Shown: piece after piece, positions 19,465 to 40,400 of the stretch
Numbering within the stretch: position 1 is the stretch's first letter
Layout of the letters: every line of letters starts with the position of its first letter
Assembly (NCBI GenBank): GCA_977030845.1
Contig: OZ365111.1
Location: 9,796,001-9,860,000, forward strand
DNA: 64,000 nt
Direction: 5' to 3'
Source of the DNA: Fimbriosthenelais zetlandica
Taxonomy: Eukaryota
Notes under the pieces: model-generated
What the model was told of the DNA's origin: nothing
Database searches by the model: none
Seen by the model: only the letters and a program-made list of their open reading frames with translations
Translations under genes and position numbers: made by a program

Positions 19465-22400
19465 ATGGCTGCTTTCATCTTATTCCTGGTTGCTGCCCTC
19501 TTACCGGAAGTACTCCCACAAAACTGCATCCCCAGTTCCGGCCAGACACCATTGAAGTTTGTCCATGTGCCAGCAGACAGAGCTAATGATGATTATTTCT
19601 ATATTGGGGGAATGTTCGGTGTTCACGAAGCCGGACCTTCACCCTATGAGTGTGGCAAGGTGAGGGAGAGGGGTATACAAAATTTAGAAGCTTTCATATG
19701 GGCCATTGGTAGTTATGGGTCCAGGCTCCAAAATGTGCTTGATGGCATTGACATTGGCGGTATTGCCTTTGATTCTTGCTCCAGTGAGGACAGATTGGTC
19801 ACCCAACTCATTAGTTTTGAAAACTGCTTTGTTGGGTTTGGTAACCCTTCTATAGAACCCAACAGAGTATTTGGCTATGTGGGCCCGGACAGGAGTAGTG
19901 AGGCCCTTCGTCTGGCACCACTTCTTGGCCAAATGAAAAAAATAACCATCAGCCATGCAGCAACCAGCACAGCATTAAGCAATCCAGAATTTAAATATTT
20001 TCTGAGAACAGTGCCCTCTGATGCGGAGCAAATCAAAGCAATAATTGGATTAGTTAAGCAACAAAACTGGAGATATATTCAAGTTGTGTACAGCATGAAC
20101 TCCTATGGCCAAACGGGTCTTCAAGGATTGATGAAGGAAGGAGAGAATGAAGGAATTTGTATCACTAATATGGAAGGGATTCCCTCAAACTACACAGATG
20201 CAGCCATGGATAGCATTGTTGATGGCCTAAGAGAGGAATCTAAAACAAGTGTCGTTGTTATGTTTGCCAATGATAACCTCGTCCGTGAATTTCTCAAAGC
20301 TGTTGGCAGAAAAAATGCAAGAGGGGAATTTACCTTCATAGGTTCTAACTCTTGGGGAATAAATGAACGTGTAGTTAAGGATGTGGAAGAGGAAGCTGAG
20401 GGAGCAGTCACCTTTACATTAAATGCCAAATGGAACCCAGTAGATGATTTTAGGCTTTACTATAGCAACCTTAAACCAGAGAACAATAAACACAACCCTT
20501 GGTTCAATGAATACTGGCAAGAGAAGTTCAACTGTTATCTTCCAGGGGAGCCAAAAGCTTATCCAGAGGCCTGTGACACAGATGTACAAAGCCTTACAGA
20601 TTTCTCTATGGATACTTATGTTCCTTATACCATTATGGCAGTGGATGCCATAATCAAAGGAGTAGACTTGGCAAAGAATGTCCAATGCCCTTATGCTGAT
20701 AACAAGCTCTGTTCAACCTTCATGAATAGTGCTGCAAAATGGGATTTACTGAAGAGCAAGATCTACACTGTACAGATGCCGTCTGTGGTTCAGTTCAATG
20801 ACACCACTGGAGACAATAGATTTGCTGATATGGATATGTACAATTACAGAGGCCCACAAGACGTTACAACTTGTGCAAATCATTGTTATACTAAGGTAGG
20901 ATAATTTCACATTTCTATTTTTCTTTAAAGCATTTCAATCCTTTCCTCATATGTGCTTCATAATCTTCAAATAATCTTCAGATAAATCTATTTATGCAAG
21001 GTGGTGATGAAGATTCATTTACAGATGTCCTTCTGGTACAAAATGCCACACAGGCAGAGCACTCCAAATGCATCTGGGGCATCGCTCTGTACCTAGGGTT
21101 TGTTTGATTGCATTTTTTGAGGAAGTCGGAATGTGGTCTTGTTTAGAGAAGGCTCTACACCAACTTTTACTTTGTTAGGGTTAGTGCGGTATAACCTAAG
21201 GGCGTATTTCAGGCGACCAGGCTTTCTTTACTAGTACAACATTTTATATGTAGAAGGGTATCCAATTTCTCTTCATGACTGTCATCATATCTTGGCAGCA
21301 ACCCATTAGATTTGAGATAAAACCGCTACTGAAAAGTCATGATTAATTGCTAAATAATAAATTGCCCCATACCCACATGATTTGCGGGGATGTATTTTGA
21401 GTATAAAACCAGTTATGGCCTGGCAATTATGGGCTGCATAACATTGGATCGATTGAAGTTGAATTAATTTCCTATGCAGAGCATGCATGTATTGTGACCA
21501 CTTGAGCTTGGCATCAGGGTTGGTCTTGAACATAGTTGACAACTGTTGATTGATTAAGATTGAAAATCTGCTCTCTGGGACATACTAATGCAACCATGAT
21601 ATATGGGTTTGAGAAAAGTTTGTTACAAAAAATACCTTTCTTGATTTGAAACTTGGTTTAAAACTTAACCTGGGTTGAAGGGAAAAATATTAATGTTTCG
21701 GCAAGAATTCTGCTTGAAATGGACTTGTTTGATTCAGACAAAAATTTGTTTACTTTTAAAAGTGTTTAGTAATTGAGTGATTTTGAGTGAAAATGAGTGA
21801 TTTTGTGGATCTTTGCATGGGACTTAACTAAAGAGCAAGGTTTAAAGGGTTAAATTCTGCAAAAGTTCCGCAATAGCTGGGCTAGATAATATTCAACAGT
21901 ACATGATAAAATCAGTCTTCATGAAAAAATACATTCCATTCATGGAGTACTTCACCCCATTTTGCACATTGTGGACCAACCCTTTATGCACCAAACCCCA
22001 TTCATCTAAACACATAGCTCTCGTATGTAAAAGCAAGTAGAGTTTGTAAGTTTGCTTTCTTTCTCTACCTACATTATGGAGAAGCAATCAGACACCTGGA
22101 TAAATATTAGTAAATGGCAATGCTATAGTCAAATGTAAGGAGGTCTTTATAAGAGATAATGAACCATCGGCTATATCTGTAATATTTATTCAAAAATTAG
22201 GCACCCTGGTCTAATATTTGAGTATTAAATGTCTTCCATAAGGCTAAAACTACAAAGATTCATGACAATTAAGTTTAGTGCTAAATATATTAATTTCCAT
22301 GACAATGACAACCAAAAAACGAATCACAACCTAAATAATATTATGTAAAGAAAATCTGTCTGTTTTCATGAATCAGAATATTGCAATTCGAAAAGGATTT

Positions 22401-25400
22401 CCCATTCGTTTACTTATGGGGCGCCAAGTGTTACCTTTTATATTTCGTACTTCAATTATTTATTTCGATACGAAATATTTTTTATTTTGTACCACATTTA
22501 TTTAATTCTGTTTCAATTTATTTTATTTCGTCTGGAATTAAAATTCCGTGGACGGAATTTTAATTAATTTTAATTCCGTGGAAGGAATTAATATTCCGTG
22601 GACGGAATTAAAATTAATTAAAATTCCGTCCACGGAATATTAATTCCTTCCACGGAATTAAAATTAATTAAAATTCCGTCCACGGAATTAAAATTAATTA
22701 AAATTCCGTCCACGAAATATTAATTCCTTCCACGGAATTAAAATTAATTAAAATTCCGTCCACAGAATTTTAATTCTGTAGACGGAATTAAAATTTCGTT
22801 GACGGAATTAATTAATTCCGTCCACAGAATTTTAATTCTGTAGACGGAATTAAAATTTCGTTGACGGAATTAATTAATTACGTCCACAGAATTTTAATTC
22901 TGTAGACAGGATTAAAATTTCGTTGACGGAATTAATTAATTACGTCCACAGAATTTTAATTCTGTGGACGGAATTAATTAATTACGTCCACAGAATTTTA
23001 ATTCTGTAGACAGAATTAAAATTTCGTTGACGGAATTAATTAATTACGTCCACAGAATTAAAATTTCGTTGACGGAATTAATTAATTACGTCCACAGAAT
23101 TTTAATTCTGTAGACAGAATTAAAATTTCGTTGACGGAATTAATTAATTACGTCCACAGAATTTTAATTCTGTAGACGGAATTAATCAATTCCGTCCACA
23201 GAATTTTAATTCTGTAGACGGAATAAAAATTTCGTTGACGGAATTAATTAATTCCGTCTATTTCCTTCAACCAACATAAGGTGGCAGCACGTTCAGGGGA
23301 CAGTGATTCACTCCATAGACGTAGACACTCCTAGCCTAGCCACCAAAGGTTTAGAGCTACAACTTGAATTTCAGGGCAATTTAAGCAAGGAAACATTTCA
23401 TAATTAAGGGAGAGTAGTCACATTTCTAAGATAATTAATCATAAACTGCATATTGAATGCTTAAAATTAATTGTAAAACCTAGAGAAACGAAGTTGTTGT
23501 CCTGCGATATCAAGACAACTAATAACGTTGTGTTGTCATAGCTCCCCCAGTGTTGCCATGAGTTCCCCGACGTCACCACCTTTGCCTCGCCCAAGAAAAG
23601 CACTCTCACCAATGATCAGTATCACATAATAAAAGTTGGTCCACTTAGAGCATATGCTAAGTCCCATTGGTAGATCCGATGACTATAATAAATAGCTTAA
23701 AAATAAGAAATAAAAGCGCCAGTAGCCCTGTCGGCGATCAGCACGTCATAGCGGACACGTGGCGGGGACGTCAGTGCTTGGGAGCGGCGCTTTGGTAACG
23801 GTGACCCCGTGACATCATAACTGGGTCCTGATCGCGCATGCGCAGTGGTAATGCCGATATGACTTACTATTGGCCAGATTCAGGTCACGTGACTATAGTA
23901 GGCCCATAGACGTAGCCTGACGTCTAACTCAACGTTAGCGTTGGTTCTTGGTAAGAAGATGGATGAAAAAGGTCTGAACAAGCTGATATCGGTACTTACA
24001 GAGGTGAGTAGACTTATTAATCAACTTTATTCAGTGTTCCCACTGTTATTTTCATCCAAATTAGAAGTGTAGGCATATCTTTGGAGCCACCTGGCACCTG
24101 GGGTAGGCCTACGGCTAGGCAGCCTCCGAGTGGGGCGACCCGGCGAGTCCTTGCCTGACCTCGGCCTAGCCATAGATATTATTACATTATTAGAGAACTA
24201 TAGCTGGGTATAGGCCTAACAGTTACAGTACAATTTAGAAACAAAATATTGGATTGGCATCTATGGCCGTATATTTGGTGGGATTTTAACACTCCAAAAC
24301 ATTCCTAAATAATTTAGGCCTAGTCCTAGAATAATAAAAAATAATACCGGCGCAAAGTTCAGCATATGCCGCCATCTTGGTCTTGGAAAACACGTGTTGC
24401 AAGATAAAATCTATATCAATCTAGGCGCCCATTTGACACCATTTGACAAATGGGCGCATAGATTTTTTCTTGCGATGTTGGTGATTGTTATGTTATGAAT
24501 ACAAGAACCAGATCAGATGCTCACTAGTTTTCACATTGAACAAGAAATTTTGCTGATACCAATGAAAAAGGTTTCCCTATGTCGGGCTAGTACGTCGTTA
24601 GACAGAGTATCCATCTCTACCAAGGTAGACCTGTACAGGGACAGGGCTGGTTATACTGGCTATAGTACGTCGTAGGCCTACATGACATATGATCTAGTAC
24701 TAGTAGTAGGCCTACATCTACATGTAGTGATGTAGGCTAGATGTGAAAACGTGGGAAGTTTTTAGGCCTAGATATATTATAAATATTTCTGCCGTAGCCG
24801 TAGGCTAGGGGCTAAGGCCTAATTAGCGTTATAATTATTATTAGGTTAATAAATTAATAGGTAATTCCCGGGACGGGGATTTAAGCTAAAAGGCTAATAA
24901 TACTACTAGGCCTAACTTTAGAAATCTAATAATAGTATTATCTATTATTAGCCCTAGCCTAGCCTACTACTAGTACTAGGCCTTACCATCTCTAGTAATA
25001 TCTACAGTATGGCCTAACATAGACAAAATATTCGCCTCGGGTCCCATTCGGGCTACCAGAGTGGGGACAGCTATGCAGGCTAGGCCTAACATAGACGTAA
25101 GCCTAGGAGGGCTAGCCTAGGCCTAGTGTCATGCCAGTATAACCAGCCTATATAATGTAGTGAAGTGACTATACTATGTCTATTATAGTATAGACACGAC
25201 CGTCGTGGCTCCACTGACACTGCCACTGAATAAAACAGGCCTTGGAGGCACAACCAAAGAGTGGGGAAGTTTAAGGGGCCCCCTTGCCCCTAAAGTTGAA
25301 AAATTCCAAATTCCGAACTAGGTTATTAATATTACTATTAGGGTTAGGTTAGGGTTAGGCCAGTAAGTTAGGGTTAGGATAGATAGAGTAAGCCAGGTAA

Positions 25401-28400
25401 AATATGTTTTTATTAGTTTTCTGGTCGGGGCCAGAGCGATTAATTCAGGGGCCTGTTTCAGAACAAATATTAGCAATGCTAAGTCTATGGGAAATTTTTA
25501 CGCTGAAACAGGCCCCTGACCTTATAGACACGTGGAGAATATAAGCAGGTCTAACCTTAGCATTATAATATGATTTTTTTTTTTTTTTTTTTTTTACAAA
25601 TTATAATCCTGCTGCAGGAATGATTATAGTTAATGGGAAAAAAATCGGAAAATGGGGGCCTTAGGAGCCCACTGGGGGACAGTTGGTGCCCAGGGGGCGA
25701 AACCCCCGGAAGCACATGGTTTCAGCTTCTTGAAGGATTTTTAAGGGAATCTCTGGACACATTTCTCTGTCAACTGAAGCCCTATGCAGTGTTTTTAGGC
25801 TAGTCCCTGCCCCTGAGCCTCTATCTGATTCTCGACTTGTAATTTTGAAAAGATTTTTTTACCAAAATAAAGCTGGTGATGTGCGCCCTATGGGCCTTTA
25901 TTTATTTGTGCGCGTCATTGGTGCAAAGTCTCTGCCCTGGACTACTCTAATGTCTTTTCTTCTATTTAGTTACGAGGAAATCCACAGCCAACAAATACCT
26001 CACACCATAATGAGCCTCAGCCTTCTACGTCTGGCACAGGCCATGACTCCGACTCTGATTTCCAGTTAACGGTGAGCATCCCAAAACATATTTTCTTCAC
26101 CAATGACAATCGGAAAGCCATCAACTGTCATGCAAATATATTAGCCTATGTAGGATAGAGGGTGTAAAATTGACAAGCGGGCGCATCCACATGGTGACAC
26201 GATGAATGCTAAAGTGTGTCCGCCCCGATTTAACGAGGAGGGCGGGGCGCCACCACGCCACCTAGCGAGTGCCGTCATAAATCACATAAGAGCCCATGTT
26301 TTTTTTAAAAAAGGTCCGTGACCCCTACTTTTTTATGTTTCATTTTAAAGCTATAAAATATATAATTTTTGCATTTTTTCATATTGTAATAGTTAATTGA
26401 AAGGGTGTTGGTGAGAGCAGGGAGGGTAGGCCTACATGTTCACGAATGGCTACATGTTCTTAATTACAGGGTCCTACATGGAGGATTTTGAATGTTTCTT
26501 TAAGCCAGATAGGCATGTTAGAGGGGTTGTGGTAGAGATAGGTATCTGACATGTTAATTGGGGATTAGACATGTAATGTTAGACGGGTTTTAGAGGTTGA
26601 ATATAATGAAAAATAGACATCTGGAACTCGATGGAGTACAGTATAAGCAGAGGGTAGATTAATGTTATTACAGTAATGAGTGTGTGTGGTAGTATGTTTA
26701 TAGTATATACTAGGTCTCTGGAAAATGGGAAGAACATTTTGTATCCGGTGCACTTTTGTCACAATAGAAAGATGAAAATTCTAACGGCAGATTTCCTAGG
26801 TTTAGTTCATCATAATTTAATATCTAAGATATAATTAATAACTATGATATAATTTCAAGCTTTAGGCTCCTAAGTTTAATAAGTGGAATTGCACCAGTTA
26901 AGAAATATTTGTGACAAGGGCAGGGATTTAGATAACGTGCGTATTTGCGTATATACGCTTCCCCACTCACTAAATACGCATCATCAGATCTTGTGCTAGG
27001 CGTACAATACGCAGTGATTTTCCATTAGAAAGCGTACCATAACTTTGTTTAATCTGAAGCTACGTCAAATAGGCATATAAACACCATTTAATAGGTCCTA
27101 ATAAGGCACAAATTCTTGACACAATGTAGTCTACTGTGCCGAATCCATCTGTGTATTCCATTTGACATTGAAGGAATGAAATAAGCAAAACCTAAGGGCA
27201 CAAAAAATTATACTGTACGCAACTTCGTGTAAAGAGGTGCGTACTGTACTCAAGTCTGAAAAAAATTATCTAAACCCCTGCAAGGGTGTATCCAGGAGAA
27301 ACGTAGATTGTGTGTTACTGCCTAATTCATGGGTAATTAATTGCAGATAATTCATTCATGATATACTTCTGTCCTCACATGTATGCTTTTCATGCTAGGC
27401 TAAGATCAAAATCATAAAATCTTAAAGTATATTTAAAATGCACAATTATAGGCTAAAGGAGATAATTATAATTTCAATGTTGGAAATGACCGGTTAATTA
27501 TTGCCCTCAACTTTATATGCATGCTCTGTGACAGAAGTTTATATTATTTGCTAAGTATTATAATAGTTTATTCTATGTTTGAAGTCATTTATAGTGTTTT
27601 TGGATATTGGAAATGGTTTGGAAGTATTTTGAACAAGGTATAACTGCTTTTCCTCCTCCTGACTGCTTTCCCCCATCCCAACTCGGGGCTGCCTCCCCGG
27701 GGTGGGGGAGGGAGGGTGATCACGTGGGTTAGTTGGTCGTGTCAGTGGGTAGTTGCCATTGGTCACTAATTTTGTACGAGTAGCTCCCCACAGACCAATC
27801 AGGGTTGAGGAATCGAAATGGGTAGAGAAGTTGAATGGTACCTATTAATACACCCTTGACCCTAATTTATGTCAGAGATGAATGAGCTCACCTGCCCACT
27901 TGGGATGGGAGGGGGTTCATTGGGTGCATGTGATTGGTTCTCGGGGTTTAATTAATAACCCATGTTCCTCTCGCTGATGTTACCATATCTTCTGATATCA
28001 TATCTTCAGCGAGAGGAGGCTGAGAATTTTCGCTCATGTTAACATATTTTCTGATATCATATCTTCAGCGAGAGGAGGCTGCTCCCCTCGCTCATGTTAC
28101 CATATCTCAGATATCATAACTCAAGCGTTGTTATACTAGCAGTTCCTGGAACTGCTAGTATAACAACGCTTTAGTCTATGGTTATACCATGGAGGGCATA
28201 TCTGCTGTTCCCCTCGCTGATGTTACCATATCTGAGATATCATATCTGATGTTCACTCGCTGATGTTCACCTCGCAGATCTCCTCGCTGGAGTTCAATCG
28301 CAGCATTTTTCGCAGGAAGCGTTTTCGTTAGCTGCCAGGCCAGCTAGCGCTCGCTGAACTTTTCGCAGCATTTTTCCTGCGATCATATCTTCTGCGAAAA

Positions 28401-31400
28401 ATCGCAGCCTCCTCTCGCTCTTGTTATACTACAGGGGATTGACTATTGCAAATTATTCAATGCGCCCGTCGGGCGCATTAGGCCATCACGTGGATGCGCC
28501 CAGGTAGAGCAAAAATAATGTGGCATGTCGCATCCCCAATTTTACACCCTGTACTGTAAGCTACATATTTCATAGTTGGTATTAATCTTTTTTAGAGGCG
28601 AGCACCCTGCATATTCCAAGTCAAAAATTAATCAATTATCTTACTTGGACATTTTCATTTCATAACCAACTAGTAGGCGAGCACCCAGTATAGAATTTAT
28701 AACAATGAAAATCAATGGCAGTATGGCCGTTGCCATCTATGAAATGGTCATTAATATTTGGCGGACCATGCCCTATATATTTCGTAAATTTAGTGATCAT
28801 TTATACAATTGTTTTGCAATACAGGGTCTAACGAAATTGGCGTTTGATTATAATTCCATTATTATTCGATAAGTACCATATAAATATATAGAAATGACAG
28901 AGAATCTTGAGACTGGAGAATCTTGGTGTGAGGTGTGAAATAATAAATCTAAAATTTATAATATATTAAATCTTTAAAATAATTATACATGTACATCAAA
29001 TAACTTGAATCAAGGCTTTATAATCATGTCACAGACACTTAGTATAACAGAGGACATTGCAGCAATGTTTTATTGTCGGATGTCCAACATGATTTTCTTT
29101 TTACACTAGAATGCACATTACCAATTTCTGTCTTTTGATAAATATATTATCTATTGCAGCCATCCGTGCAATTACCATCGATGTTTCGAAAACGGCAAGC
29201 AAATAAAGGAGGGAGACCCGGGAGACCCCCGGGGACGAAAAGCCGAAAAGTGATAAAAGAAGTTATATGCCTCATAAAGCCGAAGATCAGACAAGGACTA
29301 ATCTTTGCACCAAAAAAAGATGAATTAGCTCGACTGGGTAGTCGGGGCCTAATAGGCATTGTACAAATATGCTACAGCATGAATGAGGAAGAAGTCCAAA
29401 ATGAGTTGTCTTCATGCTTCGAAGGCTTCCCGCAGAATACATTTTCCTTCAAATTCCTCAAGGTAAAAGATAATTTCATAGAATTTTCATAGACCTATAT
29501 ACTTCTTATTGTTTATACCACGGCACAGTGTATCACATGTACTTAGGATGGGTGATCCCACTTGTCAGATCAAGGCCCTCGATGATGTTTCTGGCCTTGA
29601 TCTGAAAAGAAGGATCACCTAGCTACTCGTTAGATTTTACCTTTTATCTATTTGTTTATAGAATCAACAACTCAGCTTAATGCATTTGACTCTACCAGTT
29701 ATGAATGAACTCTTATGATACGACGTTTGTTTGTGATATTTTACAGATGCAACCCGGGAGTAGGCATCTGCGTGAACCACGACTGTCAGGCTCCATAAAG
29801 TTTACTGGGGAGGTAGTTTTATCGTTATGTGGTCAGGGAAAATTGTACATCTACTCATTAGTGGATCCTACAGAAATAGAGGTAATTCGATTATACAGTA
29901 TAGACGCTCAGTTCTTTTCATTCCCGACTCTTGACAACATGGATTGTTCATTTCATATGCCACTTTTGAGAAGTGTAGTCCTATTTTTCTAGTGTATCGA
30001 TAGGACTGCTTGAAATTGGATTTCAAGAGTCATTTAAAAAAAATGTTCGAAAGAGATTTAATTACATAGATCCCTAATCTTAAATTACTATACATCTCGT
30101 ATCGTAAGGCTTTCACTTGTTGTTATTTTTCGATGGGTTTTAAAATCCCTTATCATTGGTAAGATATTGTGTTCAACTTCAAAGCCAACTTTGCCCTACA
30201 CTTATTGTATTTATCCTGATCTCTTCAATTTTAATATATTTCCTGAACAGTCAACAAGTCCCTATGGAACATCTGAGGGTGATACATTGTCTACTACATC
30301 AGAGCCTACAGCGATATTAGCAAGTAATAGGCCTACTGTAACCACTGACAACATACAAGAGGAACATTCCACTAGTTCCGATGAGGTACAGACTAGAGAA
30401 TTGGACTCTCTTTTGGAAAGAAATGTAACTTATTCACATACAAAATGAAATATATATAATATATAAATTGCAAAAGTCCCTCCTTAATTTTCATAGTTAT
30501 AATTCTGCATTGCATGGGTAAATGTAGTAATTAAATATAATTTTGATTTAATTTTGGTATGTGTTTCAGTTTTTGCCTGATATAGATCCTCCTGTACAGC
30601 AAAGTTTACTGCCAACAGAGCCTGAAAGCACAGTATCGATTGAGGATGGGGCAAGACAAGTTCCTGATATAGATCCTCCTGTACAGCAAAGTTTACTGTC
30701 AACAGAGCCTGAAAGCACAGTATCGATTGAGGATGGGGCAAGACAAGTTCCTGATATAGATCCTCCTGTACAGCAAAGTTTACTGCCAACAGAGCCTGAA
30801 AGCACAGTATCGATTGAGGATGGGGCAAGACAAGTTCCTTATATACCACGTGAATATGTTGTAAGTGTTACATAATGTTGAGGGCAGATAATGAAATTTG
30901 CACTCTGAATTTTTCATTAACTGATATTATTAAGTTGAATTGTCTTATGTAAGGAGCAAAATTGTCAGACAATTTTCCCATTTCACTGTAAGTTAGTGCT
31001 TATACTCATAATAATAAGTCATTATGTGTCTCTTTAGATTGTGCTTGATTCAGACTCTGACGAAGCAGATGACAGAGCAAACCATGCGGTAAGGGCAATG
31101 TTTCTAATAGAACAAAGTAATGTAATATAACAGTATACTCTAAGGTACAGCAGGCGGCATGAAATAAGTTTATAGTATTTATTTAAGTGCTGGGAATCAG
31201 GAGAAATGTTTTTCATAAAACGTTCAAAAGTTTGAAAAAGGTTTTGTAAAGGAATAACAAAATTGTATTATGTATCAGGGGCACGTTATTTGAATATAGT
31301 GAGGATCATCAGCATTTTTTCAAAAATATTGTTTAACAGATAGTAATAATTATAGCTTATATTTTTGCATTATTGACTAGCCCCGTGTCGTGTACAGGAC

Positions 31401-34400
31401 ACGAAGACAAGCCCAGGTGGAAGCTGAGGAGGCTAAGTAAGTATTTGATTTTTAGTGAAAGTCTAGTCTAAATAATTTAATCAATGTCATATTGTTCCCC
31501 TGAATTGTACGCATTTCTAAAGAAAAAACATGCAGCATAAGTACACATAACCAAAAGTAATTAGGCTATTAAGTCTCCGATTTTCATAGCCCTGTAACCT
31601 GTTTTAAAAATGTATTTAAGGAGATTAATCTAAAAAAGACTGATTTTTGCATTTGCTTATTTTGCTTATTCCCAGCTCTGATACAAAACTGGACATCCTC
31701 TTTGGGCTTTATAGCCAGGTGAAGAATCATGAAGTCAGAAAAAATCATGTAAATGCTACCCGAGGAAATGTTCTGGACGCAGGGTTGAGGGCCTTTTCAC
31801 GAAAAAGCTTTAGGCCAGCAGTTCCACTCCATGTGCGCTTCGTCGGGGAGGTTGGGATAGATGGTGGGGGCCTCACACACGAGTTTCTGCAGCTTTTGCT
31901 CAGGGAAATATCAGATCGGCTGATGAGTGGACAGGACGATGCCAGATTTCTGGTGTTAGACCAGAGAGGTATACATTACTGTCTTACATTTACACTACTA
32001 ACCCACTAATTGAATTTGAGAGAATCAAAACTGTTTGTAATCTAAAGCGCGTTCTGCACTATACCGATCTGATCAGATTAAAATCTGACATGCAAGATCT
32101 GCCCCCAAATCGCATCATATCTGACATGCACAGCTCTATGAGAGAATCATCCCGATCATAATCTTATCTTAATACACATTATGCCGATTTTTAATCTTAC
32201 TTCAATTTGATCTGATGAGACCGTTAAGATCATGAAATCATACCCCAGATCGGCGTAGTGTAGAACGGGCTTTAAGCTAAATGATTTTCTGGAGCATGAC
32301 TAATTTCTTTCCTTTCTATTTTAAATAATACATTTTAAAACAATATTATAGATCTCTATATCTTAAGTAATATCTTTCAGCTCTAGCTTCTGGTCTCTAC
32401 CGAACTATGGGGAGTATTATGGCCTACAGCATTGTGCACCGTGGACCTACCCCCTGTTTTCTTCATATAAACCTGTACAGGACCATGACTGGTGGTGAAA
32501 CTGTGGACTATTGCCTGCAAGACCTGACGAACACTGACATTAAAGATAAACTAAAGAAGGTATGTTCACTGTAAATTATCTTCCTGGCTACCCCAGCTAT
32601 ATGATTAACTTCTAAACAAATCTCAATAGTTCGAGTGTCAACATCCAAGGCATTCCAGTCGCGTACGGGCTCGGAAAGGGAAAAGTACACATTGCACGGA
32701 AAATAATATGCACTTTATTACATGTTGTTATTGCCTTGAAACAGTACTTATAATGTAAAAAAAATTGTTCATTAGATAAGGGAATCAGAAAATGAAGCCG
32801 AATACAAGGAAGCGATCGACATGGTAAATGAACTCGTCGAAGTGTCTGGCTGTACGACATATTCTATGCGGTTTGCTGACAAAGATAAGATGTTCCAAGC
32901 ACTCTGTCAGCACTCACTAATAGGCAATTCTGCACAGGCTATGATTCAGTAAGTTATGCTAAAATTAAAAGATAAGATTTAAGACTGAATAAATATTTTC
33001 CATATAATCATTTTCTTTCTGCAAAGAATTATTTGAGGGAGATGAGAATTCTATACTTAATAGTACGTGAAGTATGTAAATTGGATAATGTAGATGTTGG
33101 AATGTGCTCCAAATTTAATGAGAAAGGAAATATTTTAATAACATGCATGTTTGAGATTCTTAATGTGTGAATTTGTTCACATTAGGTTATCTCAGGGCCT
33201 CAAGACACTGGGTCTGTACGAGGAGCTGATGAAGGCTCCATTAACTCTACAACCTTTGTTTGTATGCTGTGGTGAAAAACTCACTGCCTTAGTAGTGGAA
33301 GAGCTTTTTCCCCCAAGTGATTTGTCCGAAGTCGGGAGCAACAAATACCATATGGAGCTCCAGGCGCTCGCTTACTGGAGCGACTTCCTTATTGACATGG
33401 AAGGTAAGATAGCCACAAACAAATTAAAATCAACTCATGTTCATTGTAAAGTGGAACAAATGTGGATTTAAATTCCTGGCGTGCCATGGTACTTTCATTG
33501 CCATGACCATAATAATCATTGCATTATGAACCTTAAATGTTGGAACTTTACCCAACTACATAAATATCTTTCAAATCCTAACCATCTAGAAGAGGGATTC
33601 ATAATGAATCCCTTTAAAACATTGTGTGACAAGCATATTTCTTGTTATATTTGTCAGATGCTGATCGACTTGGAGAAGTGCTGATGTTTGCTACTGGTCT
33701 TGACAAACCACCACCACTTGGCTTTCATCCTGCACCCAAGCTGAGACTCAAAAATCCAGACGGTTATGATATCAAAGACAAATTCTGCGAGGCGAATACC
33801 TGTATTCATATTTTGTCGATACCAATTATACATAGAACATATGGAGATTTCCAAGAATATATGTTGCGAGGAATGCAAACCAAACTGTTTACAACCGAGT
33901 AGGTTGCATGGAAACTGTGACTAGACTGTCCCGGTGGGGGGGGGGGGGGGGGGGGGGGGTACTCGGAATTTAAGTGGGTACAAGTGCTCGTTCCCACTTT
34001 CGAGGAGAAGCGGGGTACTTTTACTGCTGACATCAAGGAGAAAAAGGGGTACTTTTTACAGTTTGTCCTCCTTGAAAATGTAAAAAATTGTATAATTCCA
34101 ATTAAAAGAACAGGACATTCCTCAGAAATTTGATAGGTATAAATCCTTGCCCATGCATATCCTTGTGGCTTGTTTGATGAATTTTTATTTCAAAGTGCAT
34201 ATTTCTCAATGTGTTAATCGAGCATATTTCATATAGTTGGCACAAACGATGGTATGTTCTCCTTGATTAGTTAAAAAAAAAGGGGTGCTTTTGGACGGGT
34301 AAAATCTTGTATTTTAAGAAAAAGGGTAGTTTTTTTAGTGTAAAATCCTTGAAAAGGGTCGGATTTTGAAGGTAGGGAACGAGCACTAGTACCCACTTTA

Positions 34401-37400
34401 ATTCAGAGTGCCCCCCGGGTCAATTGTTTATATTTTGAATGATTTGGTCACATTGTTACGTTGACTATCAGATCATAAATGGGTGGAGATACTGTCATAT
34501 ATGGCCATGTATTAGTTGATATGTACCAACAGTACGGGCAACGTCATTGAATAAATGGTATGCCTCTTCAAGAGTTGAAGGTTGTCCCAAAGCTGTAAGT
34601 TGCTCTTTGAGATGTCTTGAAAAAGAGGAAGCTATGTCGCAATGCACATGCGGTTGTGGTTGTTGGATGTTCCATGGTGTCGCGTCATCAGCTTCACAGT
34701 CATCCTCTGGTTGGTAGTCATCAACATGAAGTTCTTTCAGGTGCCTCTTAAGAACATAGAGTTGAAGTGGAGAAGAACCACCTTCAGTTGACAGACCATG
34801 TTGGTTGTGTGCAGCAGCATATTCCGATAAGTCCTGCTGCAGCAGAGATTTAAAAAGCCAGTGGAGACACATAATATCAACTTCATTATCAGGATCACTC
34901 ATTTCCTCATCAGACATCTTGGCAAACAAACGTTTGTACTTCCCAGTAACCTTTTCATTTACATCCTTCCATAATCTCTCTATCCGCTCATTATGGACTG
35001 AACTGCCAGTGAGGACGGATCTTGGGCCTCGTGCCTGCTGCATTTTTTCCCATATATCTCTGTTCTCACCACCGTAATCTGTTCTTATACGAAGTGGCCA
35101 TTCAAACTGCTCCACTGCCAAGTCAAACTGCTGCAGTACAGTTGATGCCCTATTGTTGTCACTGACATGCAGGAATGTTATTAACCTTGTGTAGCCATCT
35201 ATGGCACCATGGATGACAAACTTCCACTTTATAAGTTTGTGATTGCCATCTATATGCCAGATGTAGTGTGGACATGGGACCGAATACTTTCGTCGTTGAA
35301 TGGTGCTGGACCGTCTCTCCTCAACTCCTTCAGGATCAACCTCTTTTATAACTTTCCTTATGCGGCTGCGCTGTACGTGCAACCCTTGTTGCCTCAGGTG
35401 GCCTTTAATTATGACTTCACCACTCTCTGGATGGCGCTCCTTCAGAGCTGCAATATTGTTGTGTAGCTCTTCATCTGTCACCGCTGTGAACCTTTTGTAC
35501 TGGATTTTTTCTTTTTTTATGTATGCATATACTGTTTTTCGAGATACGCCAAGCTGTCGGGCAACTTCTGCTATAGGTATCTTTGCATCTAAGAGCTCTT
35601 TCAATCTGTCAACATCCATCTGAAAAAGATAGCCTACTTATAGTGTCAGGGTTATTAGCCTACAGCAGTAGCATATAGGGTGTGGGGGGAGGGGGTTATA
35701 CGTCAGGGTTTCATTGGGGTATGCATAAATTGGACAAGGTATATTCCCCCACCCCCCATCAACCCGATGAGTAATATAATATTTTTTTAATATTGTCAGA
35801 TATATAAGTTGACCCTGGGTAATTACACAAATCAATGAGTATCTGGTTCTATAAATCCCAAGGTTAATCATTAGGAGAAGTATGCATTGCTTTAATTGTC
35901 CAAGAGATAGAAACCTTGAAATTCATTTTTCATTTTTTTTCTGAAACCTGGAAAGTTTATTAAACTTCAAAGCAGATGATTTGTTATAGGCCTATCTGAT
36001 AATCTCGGTGACTCACTATACCCTTAATTTATAGGGGTAGGCCTATTGTTAAGGCTAGGCTTGGATCTAGGTTGCCCGAGGGTTGAAAGCTTGCCTATTC
36101 CTTAGCCTTTAAAACATGGTCATATTTGTTTGATCAATCTGTCTAGTGTCTTAAATATGCTTAGGCACATCAGCTGTATGGACCTGTTCCTGCTATTATA
36201 TTGTCCAGGAAAAGTCCTGACTCAGTATAGGTCTACTGTATACTTAGGCCTACAAAACCTAATATGTCCCTGGGCCATTTGGGATTTTCAAACTGATAAA
36301 CTTAATTTGAAATACCGGCACACCTGGAAATGAATGTCTCAGGTGGTTGCCCTGTTGGGCATACTCATCGCGTCGTCATGGAAATATATGAGACAAAAAG
36401 GCGCGAAATAATGAGTTGTAGGCTAAAAGAAAACGTAGATCTTGCTGGAGTAAGGCCTGGAGTCCGAGAGATGGTCGGACAGATTCGGACCAACAAAATA
36501 CTTTCTATAAACTTCAAATGAGGATACGGACGGTAAGAATCAATGTTGATAATGTGCTGAAGTAGTTGTTGATTTATAACTAATAAAAATAATATTAGGC
36601 CTATATATTTAATAAGCTAGAACTGGACTGAAGTCCGGTTCTAGATTGCAATTAATTGGGCCTAGTTTTGTAAAAAAAAAAAAAAAAAAAAGGAGAAAGA
36701 TGAGATTGGAATATAAAGGCTTATTGAAAATATGGTTTTCAATGGTGGGATGGCTTAATAATAGGCCCTGAGTTAAGCAGGCTTTCAGGCCTCAGACAAG
36801 CTAGATCCAGGCCTAGTATTAAGGCTTCCAGGACAGGAAGACTAAGGCCTACGAATCCTGAATTACCGAGGCTAGGCAAAGTATATATAGTGATCATAAT
36901 TTCTTGTCCTAGCATAGGCCTATATATAACCTACAGTGGATCTAATTTGAACGTCAATAAGCAACGTTTCATTAAAAAAGAAATGAAAACAAAAATAATT
37001 TCAAGGTTTCTATCGCTTGGAAAATTAGTGCAATGTCAGGTTTAAGCAATGTAATGTAGGCTTTCCCCAAATGGAATTTAAAAACCAGATAGGCCTAGGC
37101 ATAACATTGATGTAATTACTCCAGGGTCAGTTTATAGGCCTAGGCTACATCTAATTTATCCCCTTTCTAAATGAAAATCCATGTAGGCTAGGCCTATTAG
37201 CCTGACTATATTGTAACAGGCCTAGATTTATTAAAAATCCCCCATTTGAATGTGTTACAATAATATTGCCCCCCCCCCACCCTCCAAACTTCTGTCGATA
37301 TATTACATTATAAAAAATAGCCCCCCCCCCCCCCCCCGACATGAATAATTATACAACAAAACCGCCCCCTTCCAAGAATAGGTCAAAACAAAACCCCCTG

Positions 37401-40400
37401 TAAACGAAATAATATTCTTACCTTCAACAATCACTTGAATCAGTTGCAGTTTGAAATTGGAGCCTTCTGCAGAAAAATTTCACATTGGTCGCTAGGCTAG
37501 GAGTGAATCACTGTCCCCTGAATCAAGTAGGCCCTAGGCCTAACAGGTTTTTGAAGAGAGAGTGCTGCCACCTTATGGTGGTTGAAGGAAATAGACGGAA
37601 TTAATTAATTCCGTCAACGAAATTTTTATTCCGTCTACAGAATTAAAATTCTGTGGACGGAATTAATTAATTCCGTCAACGAAATTTTTATTCCGTCTAC
37701 ACAATTAAAATTCTGTGGACGGAATTAATTAATTCCGTCAACGAAATTTTAATTCCGTCTACACAATTAAAATTCTGTGGACGGAATTAATTAATTCCGT
37801 CAACGAAATTTTAATTCCGTCTACACAATTAAAATTCTGTGGACGGAATTAATTAATTCCGTCAACGAAATTTTAATTCTGTCTACAGAATTAAAATTCT
37901 GTGGACGGAATTAATTAATTCCGTCAACGAAATTTTAATTCTGTCTATAGAATTAAAATTCTGTGGACGGAATTTTAATTACTTTTAATTCTGTGGACGG
38001 AATTTTAATTAATTTTAATTCCGTGGAAGGAATTAATATTCCGTGGACAGAATTTTAATTAATTTTATTTCCGTGGACGGAATTTTAATTAATTTTAATT
38101 CCGTGGAAGGAATTAATATTCCGTGGACGGAATTTTAATTAATTTTAATTCCGTCCACGGAATATTAATTCCTTCCACGGAATTAAAATTAATTAAAATT
38201 CCGTCCACGGAATTTTAATTCCAGACGAAATAAAATAAATTGAAACAGAATTAAATAAATGTGGTACAAAATAAAAAATATTTCGTATCGAAATAAATAA
38301 TTGAAGTACGAAATATAAAAGGTAACACTTGGCGCCCCATATTTACTGTCTCCCGGGACTTATGAGTAGACCCCATTATGGTTGACAGGATGGAGGGATT
38401 TAATGGAGCTTGGAGTGCTTTTTAAGGCAATTTCCTTCATCTCCATTGACACATCTGAAGTCATGATTTTTGAGTAGCTTTAAATTGACGTATCCCCATT
38501 CATAAGCCTGCTGAAATAGATATTTGACTTTTCAAATAAAAACTCTTTCAAGTTTCTGATGTTCAGTTCTGGCAAGTGACTTAGACTCATAGTATCATCT
38601 ATGTATATGTGCACATAGCTGAAGCTGAAGAAGTTAAAGATATTAAATGTCCCAGGGAAGCTTAACATTTGGAACTGGCACAATGTCAAATTTTCTGACA
38701 AGCATTCCAATGCTATCCAAAAGTAAAATCTCTTTTATCTGTGACAAACCATTTAAAAGGTAAAAGGCTAAGGAAACTAGGTTACCTGAGGAGTTTGCCT
38801 CATGGATTCATTGTTGAAAAGACAGATAAATGACACTTCTTCCCAGGTATGTGTCCTTAAATACATCACGGTTGAGTGTGCATGATGACATGTTACATTT
38901 AGTGGTGGTAAAGATTTAAATAATGACCCACTTCCTCTAAGCCCCCCTTTACCAGACATTCGTTCTGTAATAATTTATAGATCTACCAGACCATTTTCTC
39001 GGGAAATCTCCTTCTTAATGAAGGCTTTAAATACAGTCTTTCCCTCGGCCTAGTTAGCCTCTGGCTTTGTAAGTATCTGTGTCAGATAGTTTGCAAGTCA
39101 CTATATTTATATTACTGGCTTATAGGTGGTGTATCTGTATCATTGACAATCCCGTATGATGGATGAAGCCAGAAAGACAGGAGCAATTTAGGAAATCTAA
39201 CCGCATCATTTCAGCCATCAAAAATAGACATGAAAGAGGTTAAATAGTATATAGTCAACGGATAATTCAAGCCATAGGTATGAGGTATATGAATCAGTGA
39301 CATGGCCTTTTAGACAGTTGGATCAGATGCACCTATGATCAATTTCAAGCCCTGGTGTAAACTGGACACCCTGATTTAAAACGGAACAGCCCCTCGCTGA
39401 GTTTTGCCAGAACACTGATGATTACAGTTGAGACATGAGTTCAGACTTCTTTCACGCTTGAAGAAACAAAGAGTTTTTAGTAATGATCAGGTTACAAAAC
39501 AACAAATCACCATGAAGTATTTGTAAGACTAATCTAAACTAACCATTATGCTGGCCTTCTACATAATTGAAACAATTTCGTGTGTCCACTTGTTTTTATC
39601 CGTCTGTGTATATAAATGTCGATGATGGTTTGAACATGTCGACTGTCAGAGCATACAGGACAGGAAATAAATTTAATGAACTTATCTATTCTTCGGTCCA
39701 CAGATAGGAACGTACAATACCCAAGGGAAAACAGTCCTCAATGAGCCCGTCTATTATTATGGACTTAGTGGTGAACGAATTGACCGTCCAACGTCAGTCT
39801 GCAGCAGAGATCCTTGCACCAATTGTGGAGCTATGATCAGCACATCAACAATGTCCACTCTTGATCCATCAGCTACCACCACAGCCATGGAAGGGACCAC
39901 CTTGGGGGCCCCTACACCACCCCCTGCAAAATTCAGGAAGGGTGGCTGGGTCATTGCATTAGTTGTTTTGGCTGGTAAGTGTCTGAAATGTTCACCTTTC
40001 ACTTGCAAAAGTGATTCAATGTTGTTAGTAATTACCCTTTGCTACAAGCCATACTAATGGAATTTATACAGACTACGTGTATGGCCAGGTTCCTAGGAGA
40101 AACAATAAATGAAATTGTGCTTCTGATTTTAGGTCTGGGAGTCCTGTTTACCTTCATCTTTGAGATTTATTTGATGTCCAAGATGTTTGGAACACCGGTG
40201 GTCAAGCACTGGAGGACCATGTGGCTTGGCCAGCTTCTCCTGCTTGCCATCTTTGTCTCCTATCTCACTCTCTTTGCCTTTGTACCAACTCCGACTAGAA
40301 CCACCTGTGCTATAATAAGGTATGTGCTTTGTCATCTGTCACAGAAGAGAGCAAGGATAATTGTGATAGTCTAAGAGTTGGTGTAAAGAGATCTGTGAAA

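What the first reader, a model, noticed from the sequence alone, without database searches (positions are those of the whole stretch)
22409..38347. A 15.9-kb IS3EU-type transposon that encodes its own spliced HECT E3 ubiquitin ligase
Seen directly: perfect TSD, TAT..ATA ends, long TIRs, an intact DDE transposase and an uninterrupted 13-exon HECT gene with catalytic Cys, arranged tail to tail between the TIRs. As I recall, IS3EU elements are described as a transposase plus a second, poorly characterised protein. Other DNA transposons carry Ulp1/OTU proteases or F-box modules, but I know of no characterised HECT-ligase partner. Inference: the ligase is a selected accessory factor, for example degrading host silencing factors or tuning transposase levels, rather than neutral cargo. 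Many loci annotated as G2E3-like in invertebrate and fish genomes may be parts of such elements.
Basis: partly seen in the sequence, partly recalled or inferred. Interest (0 to 1): 0.92.

Follow-up and report, generated by a model that had tools for sequence, protein, structure and literature searches.

The report
IS3EU transposon carrying a HECT ligase
This is an intact, young 15.9-kb IS3EU-type DNA transposon whose second gene is a complete HECT ubiquitin ligase, and the same transposase-plus-HECT pair turns up in fish, a nemertean, molluscs, a beetle and (as a remnant) a coral, so many animal genes labelled "G2E3-like" are probably transposon genes.

Summary
The target-site duplication is a perfect 6-bp TTTACT. 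The ends read TATGGGGCGCC..GGCGCCCCATA. The terminal inverted repeats match at 352 of 355 positions, and the first 273 are identical. A 374-aa HTH + rva_4 transposase is intact and keeps its D-D-E triad. A convergent spliced HECT gene lies beside it.

The first of these is an internal exon, so the 5' end and start codon are not located. The HECT domain is complete and keeps the catalytic Cys and the -4 Phe.

The one-off capture reading is refuted. Transposase and convergent HECT gene occur together in:
- medaka, inside 1.8-kb TIRs with nearly the same terminal motif
- sturgeon
- the nemertean Lineus
- Patella, three copies about 99.7-99.9% identical
- Mytilus, with a divergent HECT
- a firefly, three copies
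- a coral, as a 5.2-kb deletion derivative with a perfect TSD

What the ligase does for the element is inference only. No open paper I could search links HECT to IS3EU. Repbase and Dfam could not be checked.

The parts
22409..22414 (.). Left copy of the 6-bp target-site duplication (TTTACT)
   Evidence: Read directly, identical to 38342-38347
22415..22769 (+). Left terminal inverted repeat, begins TATGGGGCGCC
   Evidence: 355-nt arm, 352/355 complementary to 37987-38341, first 273 nt identical. The terminal 11-mer is identical in coral L011 and in L002, and near-identical in medaka and sturgeon
22534..23290 (.). Left subterminal array of 30/50/62-bp repeats carrying the palindromic motif TTCCGTSSACGGAA; putative transposase-binding sites (inferred)
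   Evidence: all 27 motif sites in the window lie in the two subterminal arrays; 0.05 expected by chance
29160..29462 (+). HECT gene, first exon that can be shown (internal exon; N-terminal region, in-frame ATG at 29181)
   Evidence: Acceptor ttgcag|CCA and 42% aa identity to L002:19155-19454, where the Met is not conserved; donor AAG|GTAAAA
29747..29881 (+). HECT gene exon 2 of the model (N-terminal region)
   Evidence: 55% aa identity to L002:20617-20736; GT-AG junctions in frame
30251..30424 (+). HECT gene exon 3 of the model (Ser/Thr/Glu-rich linker)
   Evidence: Best-scoring in-frame GT-AG junctions; no homology support
30570..30860 (+). HECT gene exon 4 of the model; contains 3.1 copies of an 87-bp in-frame tandem repeat (29 aa)
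   Evidence: repeat at 30576-30845, 98% matches
31719..31968 (+). HECT domain exon 1 (N-lobe start, GEVGIDGGG motif)
   Evidence: tblastn with HECT homologues; 260 hits in the representative search; junctions
32381..32559 (+). HECT domain exon 2
32776..32948 (+). HECT domain exon 3
33186..33403 (+). HECT domain exon 4
33658..33902 (+). HECT domain exon 5 (C-lobe with catalytic Cys in A-N-T-C, -4 Phe, stop codon)
   Evidence: Pfam HECT E=1.7e-5 on this exon alone; invariant residues kept
33903..34494 (.). Spacer between the two convergent stop codons; holds a 24-nt G run (33936-33959) and a 42-bp inverted repeat (33954-33995 / 34375-34416)
34495..35619 (-). Transposase gene, single ORF of 374 aa: N-terminal HTH + rva_4 DDE core (D124, D181, E214)
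37560..38222 (.). Right subterminal repeat array with the same palindromic motif
37987..38341 (-). Right terminal inverted repeat, ends GGCGCCCCATA
38342..38347 (.). Right copy of the target-site duplication (TTTACT)

Best explanation
The locus is one intact, recently inserted autonomous DNA transposon of the IS3EU/GingerRoot superfamily. It is 15,927 bp long plus a 6-bp TSD, and it sits in an intron of a class C GPCR gene.

It carries two inward-facing, convergent genes:
- An intronless HTH + DDE (rva_4) transposase.
- A multi-exon gene whose C-terminal 355 residues are a complete, catalytically competent-looking HECT domain. This follows a lineage-specific N-terminal region.

Shown here: the HECT gene is a conserved core gene of a pan-metazoan IS3EU clade. 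It is not captured cargo and not a G2E3 orthologue.

Inferred mechanism:
- The transposase binds the palindromic subterminal repeats, cuts at the conserved TATGGGGCGCC termini and integrates with a 6-bp staggered cut.
- The HECT protein uses its fast-evolving N-terminus to pick a substrate, either a host factor that restrains transposition or a component of the transposition complex.
- It then ubiquitinates that substrate through the Cys thioester route, to the element's benefit.
For: Anatomy: TSD, TIR, motif arrays; transposase, DDE; spliced HECT model, catalytic residues. A profile of the HECT clade matches solved HECT domains over their full length (HUWE1, Rsp5, SMURF2, E about 1e-23).

Family definition: TA..TA ends and a 6-bp TSD (PMC10045372); TAYGG..CCRTA ends in fungal IS3EU (PMC12730594).

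Conservation of the gene pair:
- Medaka L010: both genes inside 1.8-kb TIRs ending TATGGAGCGCC / GGCACCCCATA.
- Sturgeon L017.
- Lineus L012.
- Patella L013-15: three copies 99.7-99.9% identical, starting TATGGAAGCC.
- Mytilus L004-9: six loci with a convergent gene carrying a divergent HECT C-lobe.
- Photinus L018-20.
- Coral L011: 5.2-kb derivative with perfect TSD GAAATG, the same terminal 11-mer and a HECT last-exon remnant.

Co-inheritance: ((medaka, sturgeon), Lineus) is recovered in both the HECT tree (support 99/98) and the transposase tree (100/85).

N-terminus: not alignable between lineages, but conserved with the same intron position in the closest relative L002.
Against: - No expression, activity or copy-number data for this genome. 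Only one copy lies in the window, and the scan's notes hold no other.
- The start codon and first exon(s) of the HECT gene are not located, so this copy's gene could be 5'-defective.
- The closest transposase relatives do not show the convergent layout. L001 has no HECT within 3 kb. L002 has the orthologous N-terminal exons on the same strand 8 kb downstream. L003 has HECT exons upstream on the same strand, and that HECT does not track its transposase in the tree.
- Outside one clade the two trees are unresolved or differ.
- The Diadema HECT homologue has no transposase within 10 kb.
- Patella copies are too similar to test selection: 0 of 18 substitutions fall in the CDS, against 1.6 expected.
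- The function of the ligase is entirely inferred.
Confidence: 0.8

Rival explanations
1. One-off capture. This copy, or this species' family, picked up a host HECT gene as neutral cargo, and the ligase plays no part in the element's biology.
For: DNA transposons do pick up host fragments: GingerRoot elements carry acquired gene fragments (PMC6839031), and TET/JBP genes move between fungal transposon superfamilies (PMC12730594). The L003 HECT does not track its transposase.
Against: The same transposase/HECT pair, in the same convergent layout, occurs in teleost, sturgeon, nemertean, gastropod, bivalve, beetle and (as a remnant) coral. The gene is spliced and intact with catalytic residues kept. 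It has multiple near-identical copies in Patella and Photinus.
Confidence: 0.03
2. The ligase is a self-regulator. It ubiquitinates the element's own transposase, or itself, to limit or time transposition. It does not attack host defence.
For: There is no direct evidence. It is compatible with the strict pairing and short convergent spacing (595 bp here, 281 bp in Photinus). Autoregulation is common among transposons (general knowledge).
Against: The transposase core is highly conserved, whereas the ligase N-terminus changes beyond recognition between lineages. That fits a fast-changing target better than a conserved one.
Confidence: 0.2
3. The HECT domain acts non-catalytically, for example as a ubiquitin- or E2-binding or localisation module. 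As I recall, this has been reported for the HECT domain of mammalian G2E3.
For: Nearest named relatives are 'G2E3-like'. Mytilus copies are so divergent that Pfam barely sees the domain (E=0.053).
Against: Catalytic Cys, the A-N-T-C motif and the -4 Phe are kept in the window copy, and the Cys motif is invariant in the eight-protein alignment A1. The Mytilus exon also keeps a T-C motif at the aligned position.
Confidence: 0.12
4. Nothing new. Curated IS3EU consensus entries in Repbase/Dfam (for example the zebrafish, Hydra, beetle or acorn-worm families) already list the second ORF as a HECT protein.
For: 17 autonomous IS3EU families are in Repbase (PMC10045372), and curators normally record all ORFs. 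The hosts named for the first families (zebrafish, beetle; PMC11934779) overlap the taxa where I find the pair.
Against: No hit for HECT or ubiquitin in the IS3EU, IS481EU, GingerRoot, TET-transposon or Hydractinia papers, nor in four full-text searches. [quoted passage not shown] Genome papers still read G2E3 copy gains as host adaptation (PMC9700323).
Confidence: 0.35

Closest known systems
[quoted passage not shown] 2019, PMC6839031)
   Same: 6-bp TSD, TA..TA termini (here TATGG..CCATA), long TIRs, an IS3/integrase-like DDE transposase without an HHCC finger and with an N-terminal HTH. Host range is mostly aquatic animals, including medaka.
   Different: No published description that I could find mentions a HECT gene. 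This element is large (15.9 kb) and has dense palindromic subterminal arrays.
Fungal IS3EU families carrying alpha-kinase and TET/JBP dioxygenase genes (Kojima 2025, PMC12730594)
   Same: Same superfamily, same TAYGG..CCRTA ends and 6-bp TSD. There is a second enzyme gene in opposite orientation to the transposase, read as a counter-silencing or accessory factor.
   Different: The accessory enzyme is a kinase or dioxygenase, not a ubiquitin ligase. TET genes hop between superfamilies, whereas the HECT gene here travels with one transposase clade across animal phyla.
[quoted passage not shown]
   Same: C-terminal HECT domain of the same subtype, according to automatic annotation of the closest proteins.
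   Different: No PHD/RING-type fingers in the window gene or in eight TE-type homologues. It is multi-copy, lies between TIRs, is paired with a transposase, and has a lineage-specific N-terminus. A true G2E3 sequence could not be fetched, so the tree position is untested.
DNA transposons that encode ubiquitin-system proteases: Ulp1/OTU domains in Ginger, MULE (KI-MULE), hAT and Helitron elements (from memory, not checked here)
   Same: A mobile element carrying an enzyme of the ubiquitin or ubiquitin-like system next to its transposase.
   Different: Those are deconjugating proteases, often fused to the transposase. Here it is a conjugating E3 ligase encoded by a separate spliced gene.

Membership tests
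IS3EU/GingerRoot superfamily | 6-bp target-site duplication | tested here: met
   TTTACT on both sides. The related coral copy has GAAATG on both sides.
IS3EU/GingerRoot superfamily | TA..TA termini (TAYGG..CCRTA in characterised families) and TIRs | tested here: met
   TATGGGGCGCC..GGCGCCCCATA; 355-nt TIR at 99%. Criteria taken from PMC10045372 and PMC12730594.
IS3EU/GingerRoot superfamily | IS3/integrase-like DDE transposase, no HHCC zinc finger, first D 100-300 residues from the N-terminus | tested here: met
   Pfam rva_4 E=1e-66, rve E=9e-7, HTH_7 at residues 2-35. D124, D181 and E214 sit in columns >=98% conserved.
IS3EU/GingerRoot superfamily | Transposase groups with Repbase IS3EU / GingerRoot reference proteins in a tree | not testable with these tools
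   Repbase and GingerRoot reference proteins were not available. Indirect support only: homologues occur in the species listed for GingerRoot, such as Oryzias latipes (PMC6839031).
HECT-type E3 ubiquitin ligases | Complete bilobed HECT domain (about 350 aa) at the C-terminus | tested here: met
   Model residues 297-656 align to the C-terminal end of Pfam-HECT proteins. The clade profile covers solved HECT domains at positions 3-345.
HECT-type E3 ubiquitin ligases | Catalytic cysteine about 35 residues from the C-terminus, and the conserved -4 Phe | tested here: met
   A-N-T-C with Cys at model residue 618, and Phe four residues from the end. 33 of 37 invariant residues are kept.
HECT-type E3 ubiquitin ligases | E2-dependent ubiquitin thioester formation and transfer | not testable with these tools
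   Needs biochemistry.
G2E3 orthologues | N-terminal PHD/RING-like zinc fingers preceding the HECT domain | tested here: not met
   No zinc-finger family hit in any N-terminal exon or in TE-type homologues.
G2E3 orthologues | Single-copy host gene in conserved host synteny | tested here: not met
   The gene lies between the TIRs of a transposon. Homologues are multi-copy and paired with rva_4.
G2E3 orthologues | HECT domain nearest to bona fide G2E3 in a HECT phylogeny | not tested
Only the automatic names of neighbours point that way.

The most novel reading that the evidence does not exclude
A clade of IS3EU transposons spread across Metazoa (cnidarians to vertebrates) has kept a catalytically active HECT E3 ligase as an obligatory second gene. 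If so, this would be the first transposon-encoded ubiquitin ligase. It would use a rapidly evolving N-terminus to mark a host restriction or repair factor (or the post-cleavage transposition complex) for ubiquitination, and transposition would depend on it. A corollary is that a large share of 'G2E3-like' gene-family expansions in animal genomes would be transposon copies, and host G2E3 itself may share ancestry with this transposon gene.
Probability: 0.3. Interest if true: 0.85.

Novelty: new variant of a known kind. Interest (0 to 1): 0.62.

Why it matters
Mobile elements are known to carry proteases of the ubiquitin system, kinases, demethylases and DNA-repair enzymes. A conserved, separately spliced E3 ligase would be a new way for a transposon to act on host protein stability. 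It is directly testable, because near-identical (apparently young) copies exist in tractable species (medaka, Patella, firefly).

There is also a practical point. [quoted passage not shown] Their copy-number gains have been read as host adaptation, for example 20 G2E3 copies in a hadal sea cucumber (PMC9700323), and G2E3 blastx hits have turned up in unclassified fish repeats (PMC5638112). If these are transposon genes, such inferences and gene counts need revisiting. That link is my inference; I did not test those genomes.

The 11-bp terminus TATGGGGCGCC is conserved from coral to fish. Together with the palindromic subterminal motif, it gives concrete DNA substrates for studying IS3EU transposition, which recent literature calls largely unexplored (PMC11934779).

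Tried and rejected
- Looking for upstream HECT exons. tblastx and short-peptide comparison of window 23291-29160 against L002 found nothing credible. The start codon stays unlocated.
- A third gene. No Pfam hit for 12 other ORF pieces inside the element, no tRNA and no Rfam family.
- Other copies. There are none in the window. The scan's notes by words or sequence gave nothing.
- N-terminal domain identity. No Pfam hit and no similarity to other TE-type HECT proteins. The protein atlas gave only unnamed eukaryotic clusters (score 0.94) and weak ubiquitin-like-fold leads (about 0.6), which I treat as a lead only.
- Selection test on Patella copies. Too few substitutions: 18 in 18.9 kb, 0 in the CDS against 1.6 expected.
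- Word-indexed protein searches with Haliotis and Patella HECT proteins returned only 4 and 18 hits and no true G2E3. The G2E3-versus-transposon tree could therefore not be built.
- Structure prediction of the spliced HECT protein was not run. A multi-exon protein has no single reference, and I did not type it in.
- Element ends in Photinus. The 3.35-kb unit shared by the three copies has no clear TAYGG ends.
- Layout in L001-L003. It could not be resolved with the flanks held.
- Rejected: a host HECT gene merely flanked by chance inverted repeats. This is ruled out by the perfect TSD, the 273-nt identical termini and the cross-phylum recurrence.


Full report
**1. What is in the sequence**

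- The element runs from 22415 to 38341 (15,927 bp). It is flanked by a perfect 6-bp direct repeat, TTTACT, at 22409-22414 and 38342-38347.
- Its ends read TATGGGGCGCC... and ...GGCGCCCCATA. The two arms are identical for the first 273 nt and match at 352 of 355 positions.
- Inside the arms lie arrays of 30-, 50- and 62-bp repeats. They carry a palindromic 14-mer, TTCCGTSSACGGAA, at 27 sites. All 27 sites are in the two subterminal regions and none is elsewhere in the 64-kb window, where 0.05 are expected by chance.
- No related sequence occurs elsewhere in the window.
- The element lies in an intron of a + strand class C GPCR gene. An ANF_receptor exon sits at 19351-20901, and 7tm_3 exons at 40015-41558.

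**2. The transposase**

- A single ORF at 34495-35619 on the minus strand encodes 374 aa. It has an N-terminal helix-turn-helix (HTH_7, E=8e-8) and an rva_4 integrase core (E=1e-66).
- A search found 992 homologues with E<=1e-10, the best at 59% identity. Named ones come from Mytilus, Lineus, a coral, a sturgeon and many teleosts.
- In an alignment with the 120 listed homologues, the window protein keeps every residue that is at least 93% conserved. These include D124 (W-H-x-D-G), D181 (R-x-D-x-G-G-E-N) and E214 (H-N-x-R-x-E-R), the expected D-D-E triad.

**3. The HECT gene**

- On the plus strand, five ORF pieces match HECT proteins. The last piece alone hits Pfam HECT.
- I chose in-frame GT-AG junctions and obtained nine exons: 29160-29462, 29747-29881, 30251-30424, 30570-30860, 31719-31968, 32381-32559, 32776-32948, 33186-33403 and 33658-33902. 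They join into one open frame of 656 codons ending in a stop.
- Residues 297-656 align without a break to the C-terminal HECT domains of Haliotis, Argopecten and Patella proteins at 34-38% identity, with E down to 5e-73.
- Against an alignment of eight such domains, the window protein keeps 33 of 37 invariant residues. These include the A-N-T-C catalytic cysteine and the phenylalanine four residues from the C-terminus.
- The profile of this clade matches solved HECT domains (HUWE1, Rsp5, SMURF2, AREL1, NEDD4, E6AP) across their whole length, with E about 1e-23.
- The N-terminal 300 residues have no Pfam family, and in particular no PHD or RING finger. They have no detectable similarity to the N-termini of the other HECT proteins.
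- The first two exons are nevertheless conserved at 42-55% identity in the locus with the second-closest transposase (L002), with the same acceptor position.
- In L002 the only Met of the window's first shown exon is replaced, and similarity extends upstream of it. That exon is therefore internal, and at least one upstream exon with the start codon remains unlocated.
Exons 3 and 4 of my model (a low-complexity linker with a 29-aa triple repeat) rest on splice logic alone.
- The two genes are convergent, with stop codons 595 bp apart. I found no third gene, tRNA or Rfam family.

**4. Is the HECT gene cargo or a family component?**

I looked up the genomic context of transposase homologues at 41-48% identity and of HECT homologues (12 look-ups).

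| Organism (locus) | What was found |
|---|---|
| Medaka (L010) | Transposase followed by a convergent 527-aa Pfam-HECT gene. Both lie inside about 1.8-kb inverted repeats ending TATGGAGCGCC / GGCACCCCATA. |
| Sturgeon (L017) | Left end TATGGGGTGCC, a transposase, and unannotated convergent HECT exons. |
| Lineus longissimus (L012) | Convergent 757-aa HECT gene. |
| Patella vulgata (L013-15) | Three copies about 99.7-99.9% identical over >18 kb, beginning TATGGAAGCC. HECT gene followed by a convergent rva_4 gene. |
| Photinus pyralis (L018-20) | Three copies; HECT gene and a convergent rva_4 gene 281 bp apart. |
| Mytilus (L004-9) | Six loci with a convergent 842-aa gene that Pfam does not recognise. 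Its last exon matches my clade HMM (i-E 6e-5) at the C-lobe and carries a T-C motif there; Pfam HECT E=0.053. |
| Coral Desmophyllum (L011) | A 5.2-kb copy with a perfect TSD (GAAATG) and the same 11-nt terminus as the window. It holds a transposase and only a remnant of the last HECT exon, so it is an internal-deletion derivative. |

- Small trees built from HMM-aligned fragments recover ((medaka, sturgeon), Lineus) for both genes. Support is 99/98 for HECT and 100/85 for the transposase. The rest is unresolved.
- One-off capture is therefore excluded. The pair has been inherited together in at least part of the clade.

Exceptions:
- L001 has no HECT within its 3-kb flank.
- L002 has the orthologous N-terminal exons on the same strand, 8 kb downstream of the transposase.
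- L003 has HECT exons upstream on the same strand, and that HECT does not group with the window's HECT although the transposases are close.
- These three are low-coverage ENA contigs with short flanks. Adjacent or rearranged copies may explain them, but I could not resolve it.
- A Diadema HECT homologue has no transposase within 10 kb.

**5. How it most likely works**

- Shown: the anatomy is that of an autonomous cut-and-paste element, with intact catalytic motifs in both proteins.
- Inferred: the HTH of the transposase recognises the palindromic subterminal motif. The DDE core then cuts at the conserved TATGGGGCGCC termini and makes a 6-bp staggered cut at the target.
- For the ligase, the pattern is a conserved catalytic domain and an N-terminus that changes beyond recognition between lineages yet is constrained within a lineage. 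This fits a substrate-recognition module tracking a changing target.
- I therefore favour ubiquitination of a host factor that limits transposition, or of a protein that must be cleared from the transposition complex. Self-regulation of the transposase and a non-catalytic role are the rivals.
- None of this is tested. Selection could not be measured on the Patella copies.

**6. Comparison with what is known**

- The element meets the published IS3EU criteria: a 6-bp TSD, TA..TA ends of the TAYGG..CCRTA type, and an IS3-like DDE transposase without an HHCC finger (PMC10045372, PMC12730594).
- Fungal IS3EU families carry an alpha-kinase gene opposite the transposase and sometimes a TET/JBP dioxygenase (PMC12730594). 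An enzyme-coding second gene is thus in character for the superfamily, but a HECT ligase is not mentioned.
- I found no mention of HECT or ubiquitin in the IS3EU, IS481EU, GingerRoot, Hydractinia or DDE-survey papers, nor in full-text searches. [quoted passage not shown]
- Repbase and Dfam entries could not be inspected, so prior curation of a HECT ORF cannot be excluded. I put that at about one in three.
[quoted passage not shown] Other close relatives, in Capitella, Lingula and other beetles, are unnamed HECT or hypothetical proteins.
- They are not G2E3 orthologues: they lack zinc fingers, are multi-copy, and lie inside transposons.

**7. Verdict**

- The classification is right.
- The core idea, that the ligase belongs to the element and is not incidental cargo, is strongly supported and extended across animal phyla.
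- The proposed function is untested.
- I rate it a new variant of a known kind, with interest 0.62.

Noticed in passing
window 19351-20901 and 40015-41558 (+): The transposon sits inside an intron of a class C GPCR gene. The upstream exon carries an ANF_receptor ligand-binding domain (E=6e-39), and the downstream exons match 7tm_3. The HECT gene has the same orientation as the host gene.
   Followed up: partly
window 33936-33959 and 33954-33995 / 34375-34416: The spacer between the two convergent stop codons holds a 24-nt G run and a 42-bp inverted repeat (90%). This may be a shared 3'-end or terminator structure.
   Followed up: no
window 30576-30845: An 87-bp tandem repeat (3.1 copies, 98% matches) lies in frame inside a putative coding exon of the HECT gene. 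It gives three copies of a 29-aa Pro/Glu/Ser-rich unit.
   Followed up: partly
L011:9292-14521 (coral Desmophyllum pertusum): A 5.2-kb internal-deletion derivative of the same family, with a perfect 6-bp TSD (GAAATG). Its terminal 11 nt are identical to those of the window element despite the phylum-level distance.
   Followed up: yes
L013, L014, L015 (Patella vulgata): Three copies of a >18.9-kb element with only 18 substitution columns between them. This points to very recent activity. The HECT protein is identical in all three, and RefSeq names it G2E3-like.
   Followed up: yes
L017:16014-20487 (-) (Huso huso): HECT exons convergent with the annotated rva_4 gene are not annotated at all in this assembly.
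   Followed up: partly
P0281 (Gadus chalcogrammus), P0269 (Phaedon cochleariae), L019:12252-16595: Annotated proteins that mix transposon-type HECT or rva_4 parts with unrelated domains: PRDM2 PR + C2H2 zinc finger + HECT; TNP-like RNase H; DUF4371/ZBED5-like + rva_4. These are either chimeric gene models over nested transposons or real fusions.
   Followed up: no
L002:1457 and L002:18166: One clear element end (TATGGGGCGCCGTTTG) lies 8.5 kb upstream of the transposase. A degenerate look-alike (TATGGGGGGCAC) lies 1 kb upstream of HECT exons that are on the same strand as the transposase. These may be two adjacent or rearranged copies; unresolved.
   Followed up: partly
window 29160-29881 (exons 1-2 of the HECT model): The N-terminal region resembles many unnamed eukaryotic protein clusters (cnidarian, chordate; atlas score 0.94). 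It resembles several ubiquitin-like-fold families only weakly (about 0.6). This could be a UBL-type domain.
   Followed up: partly
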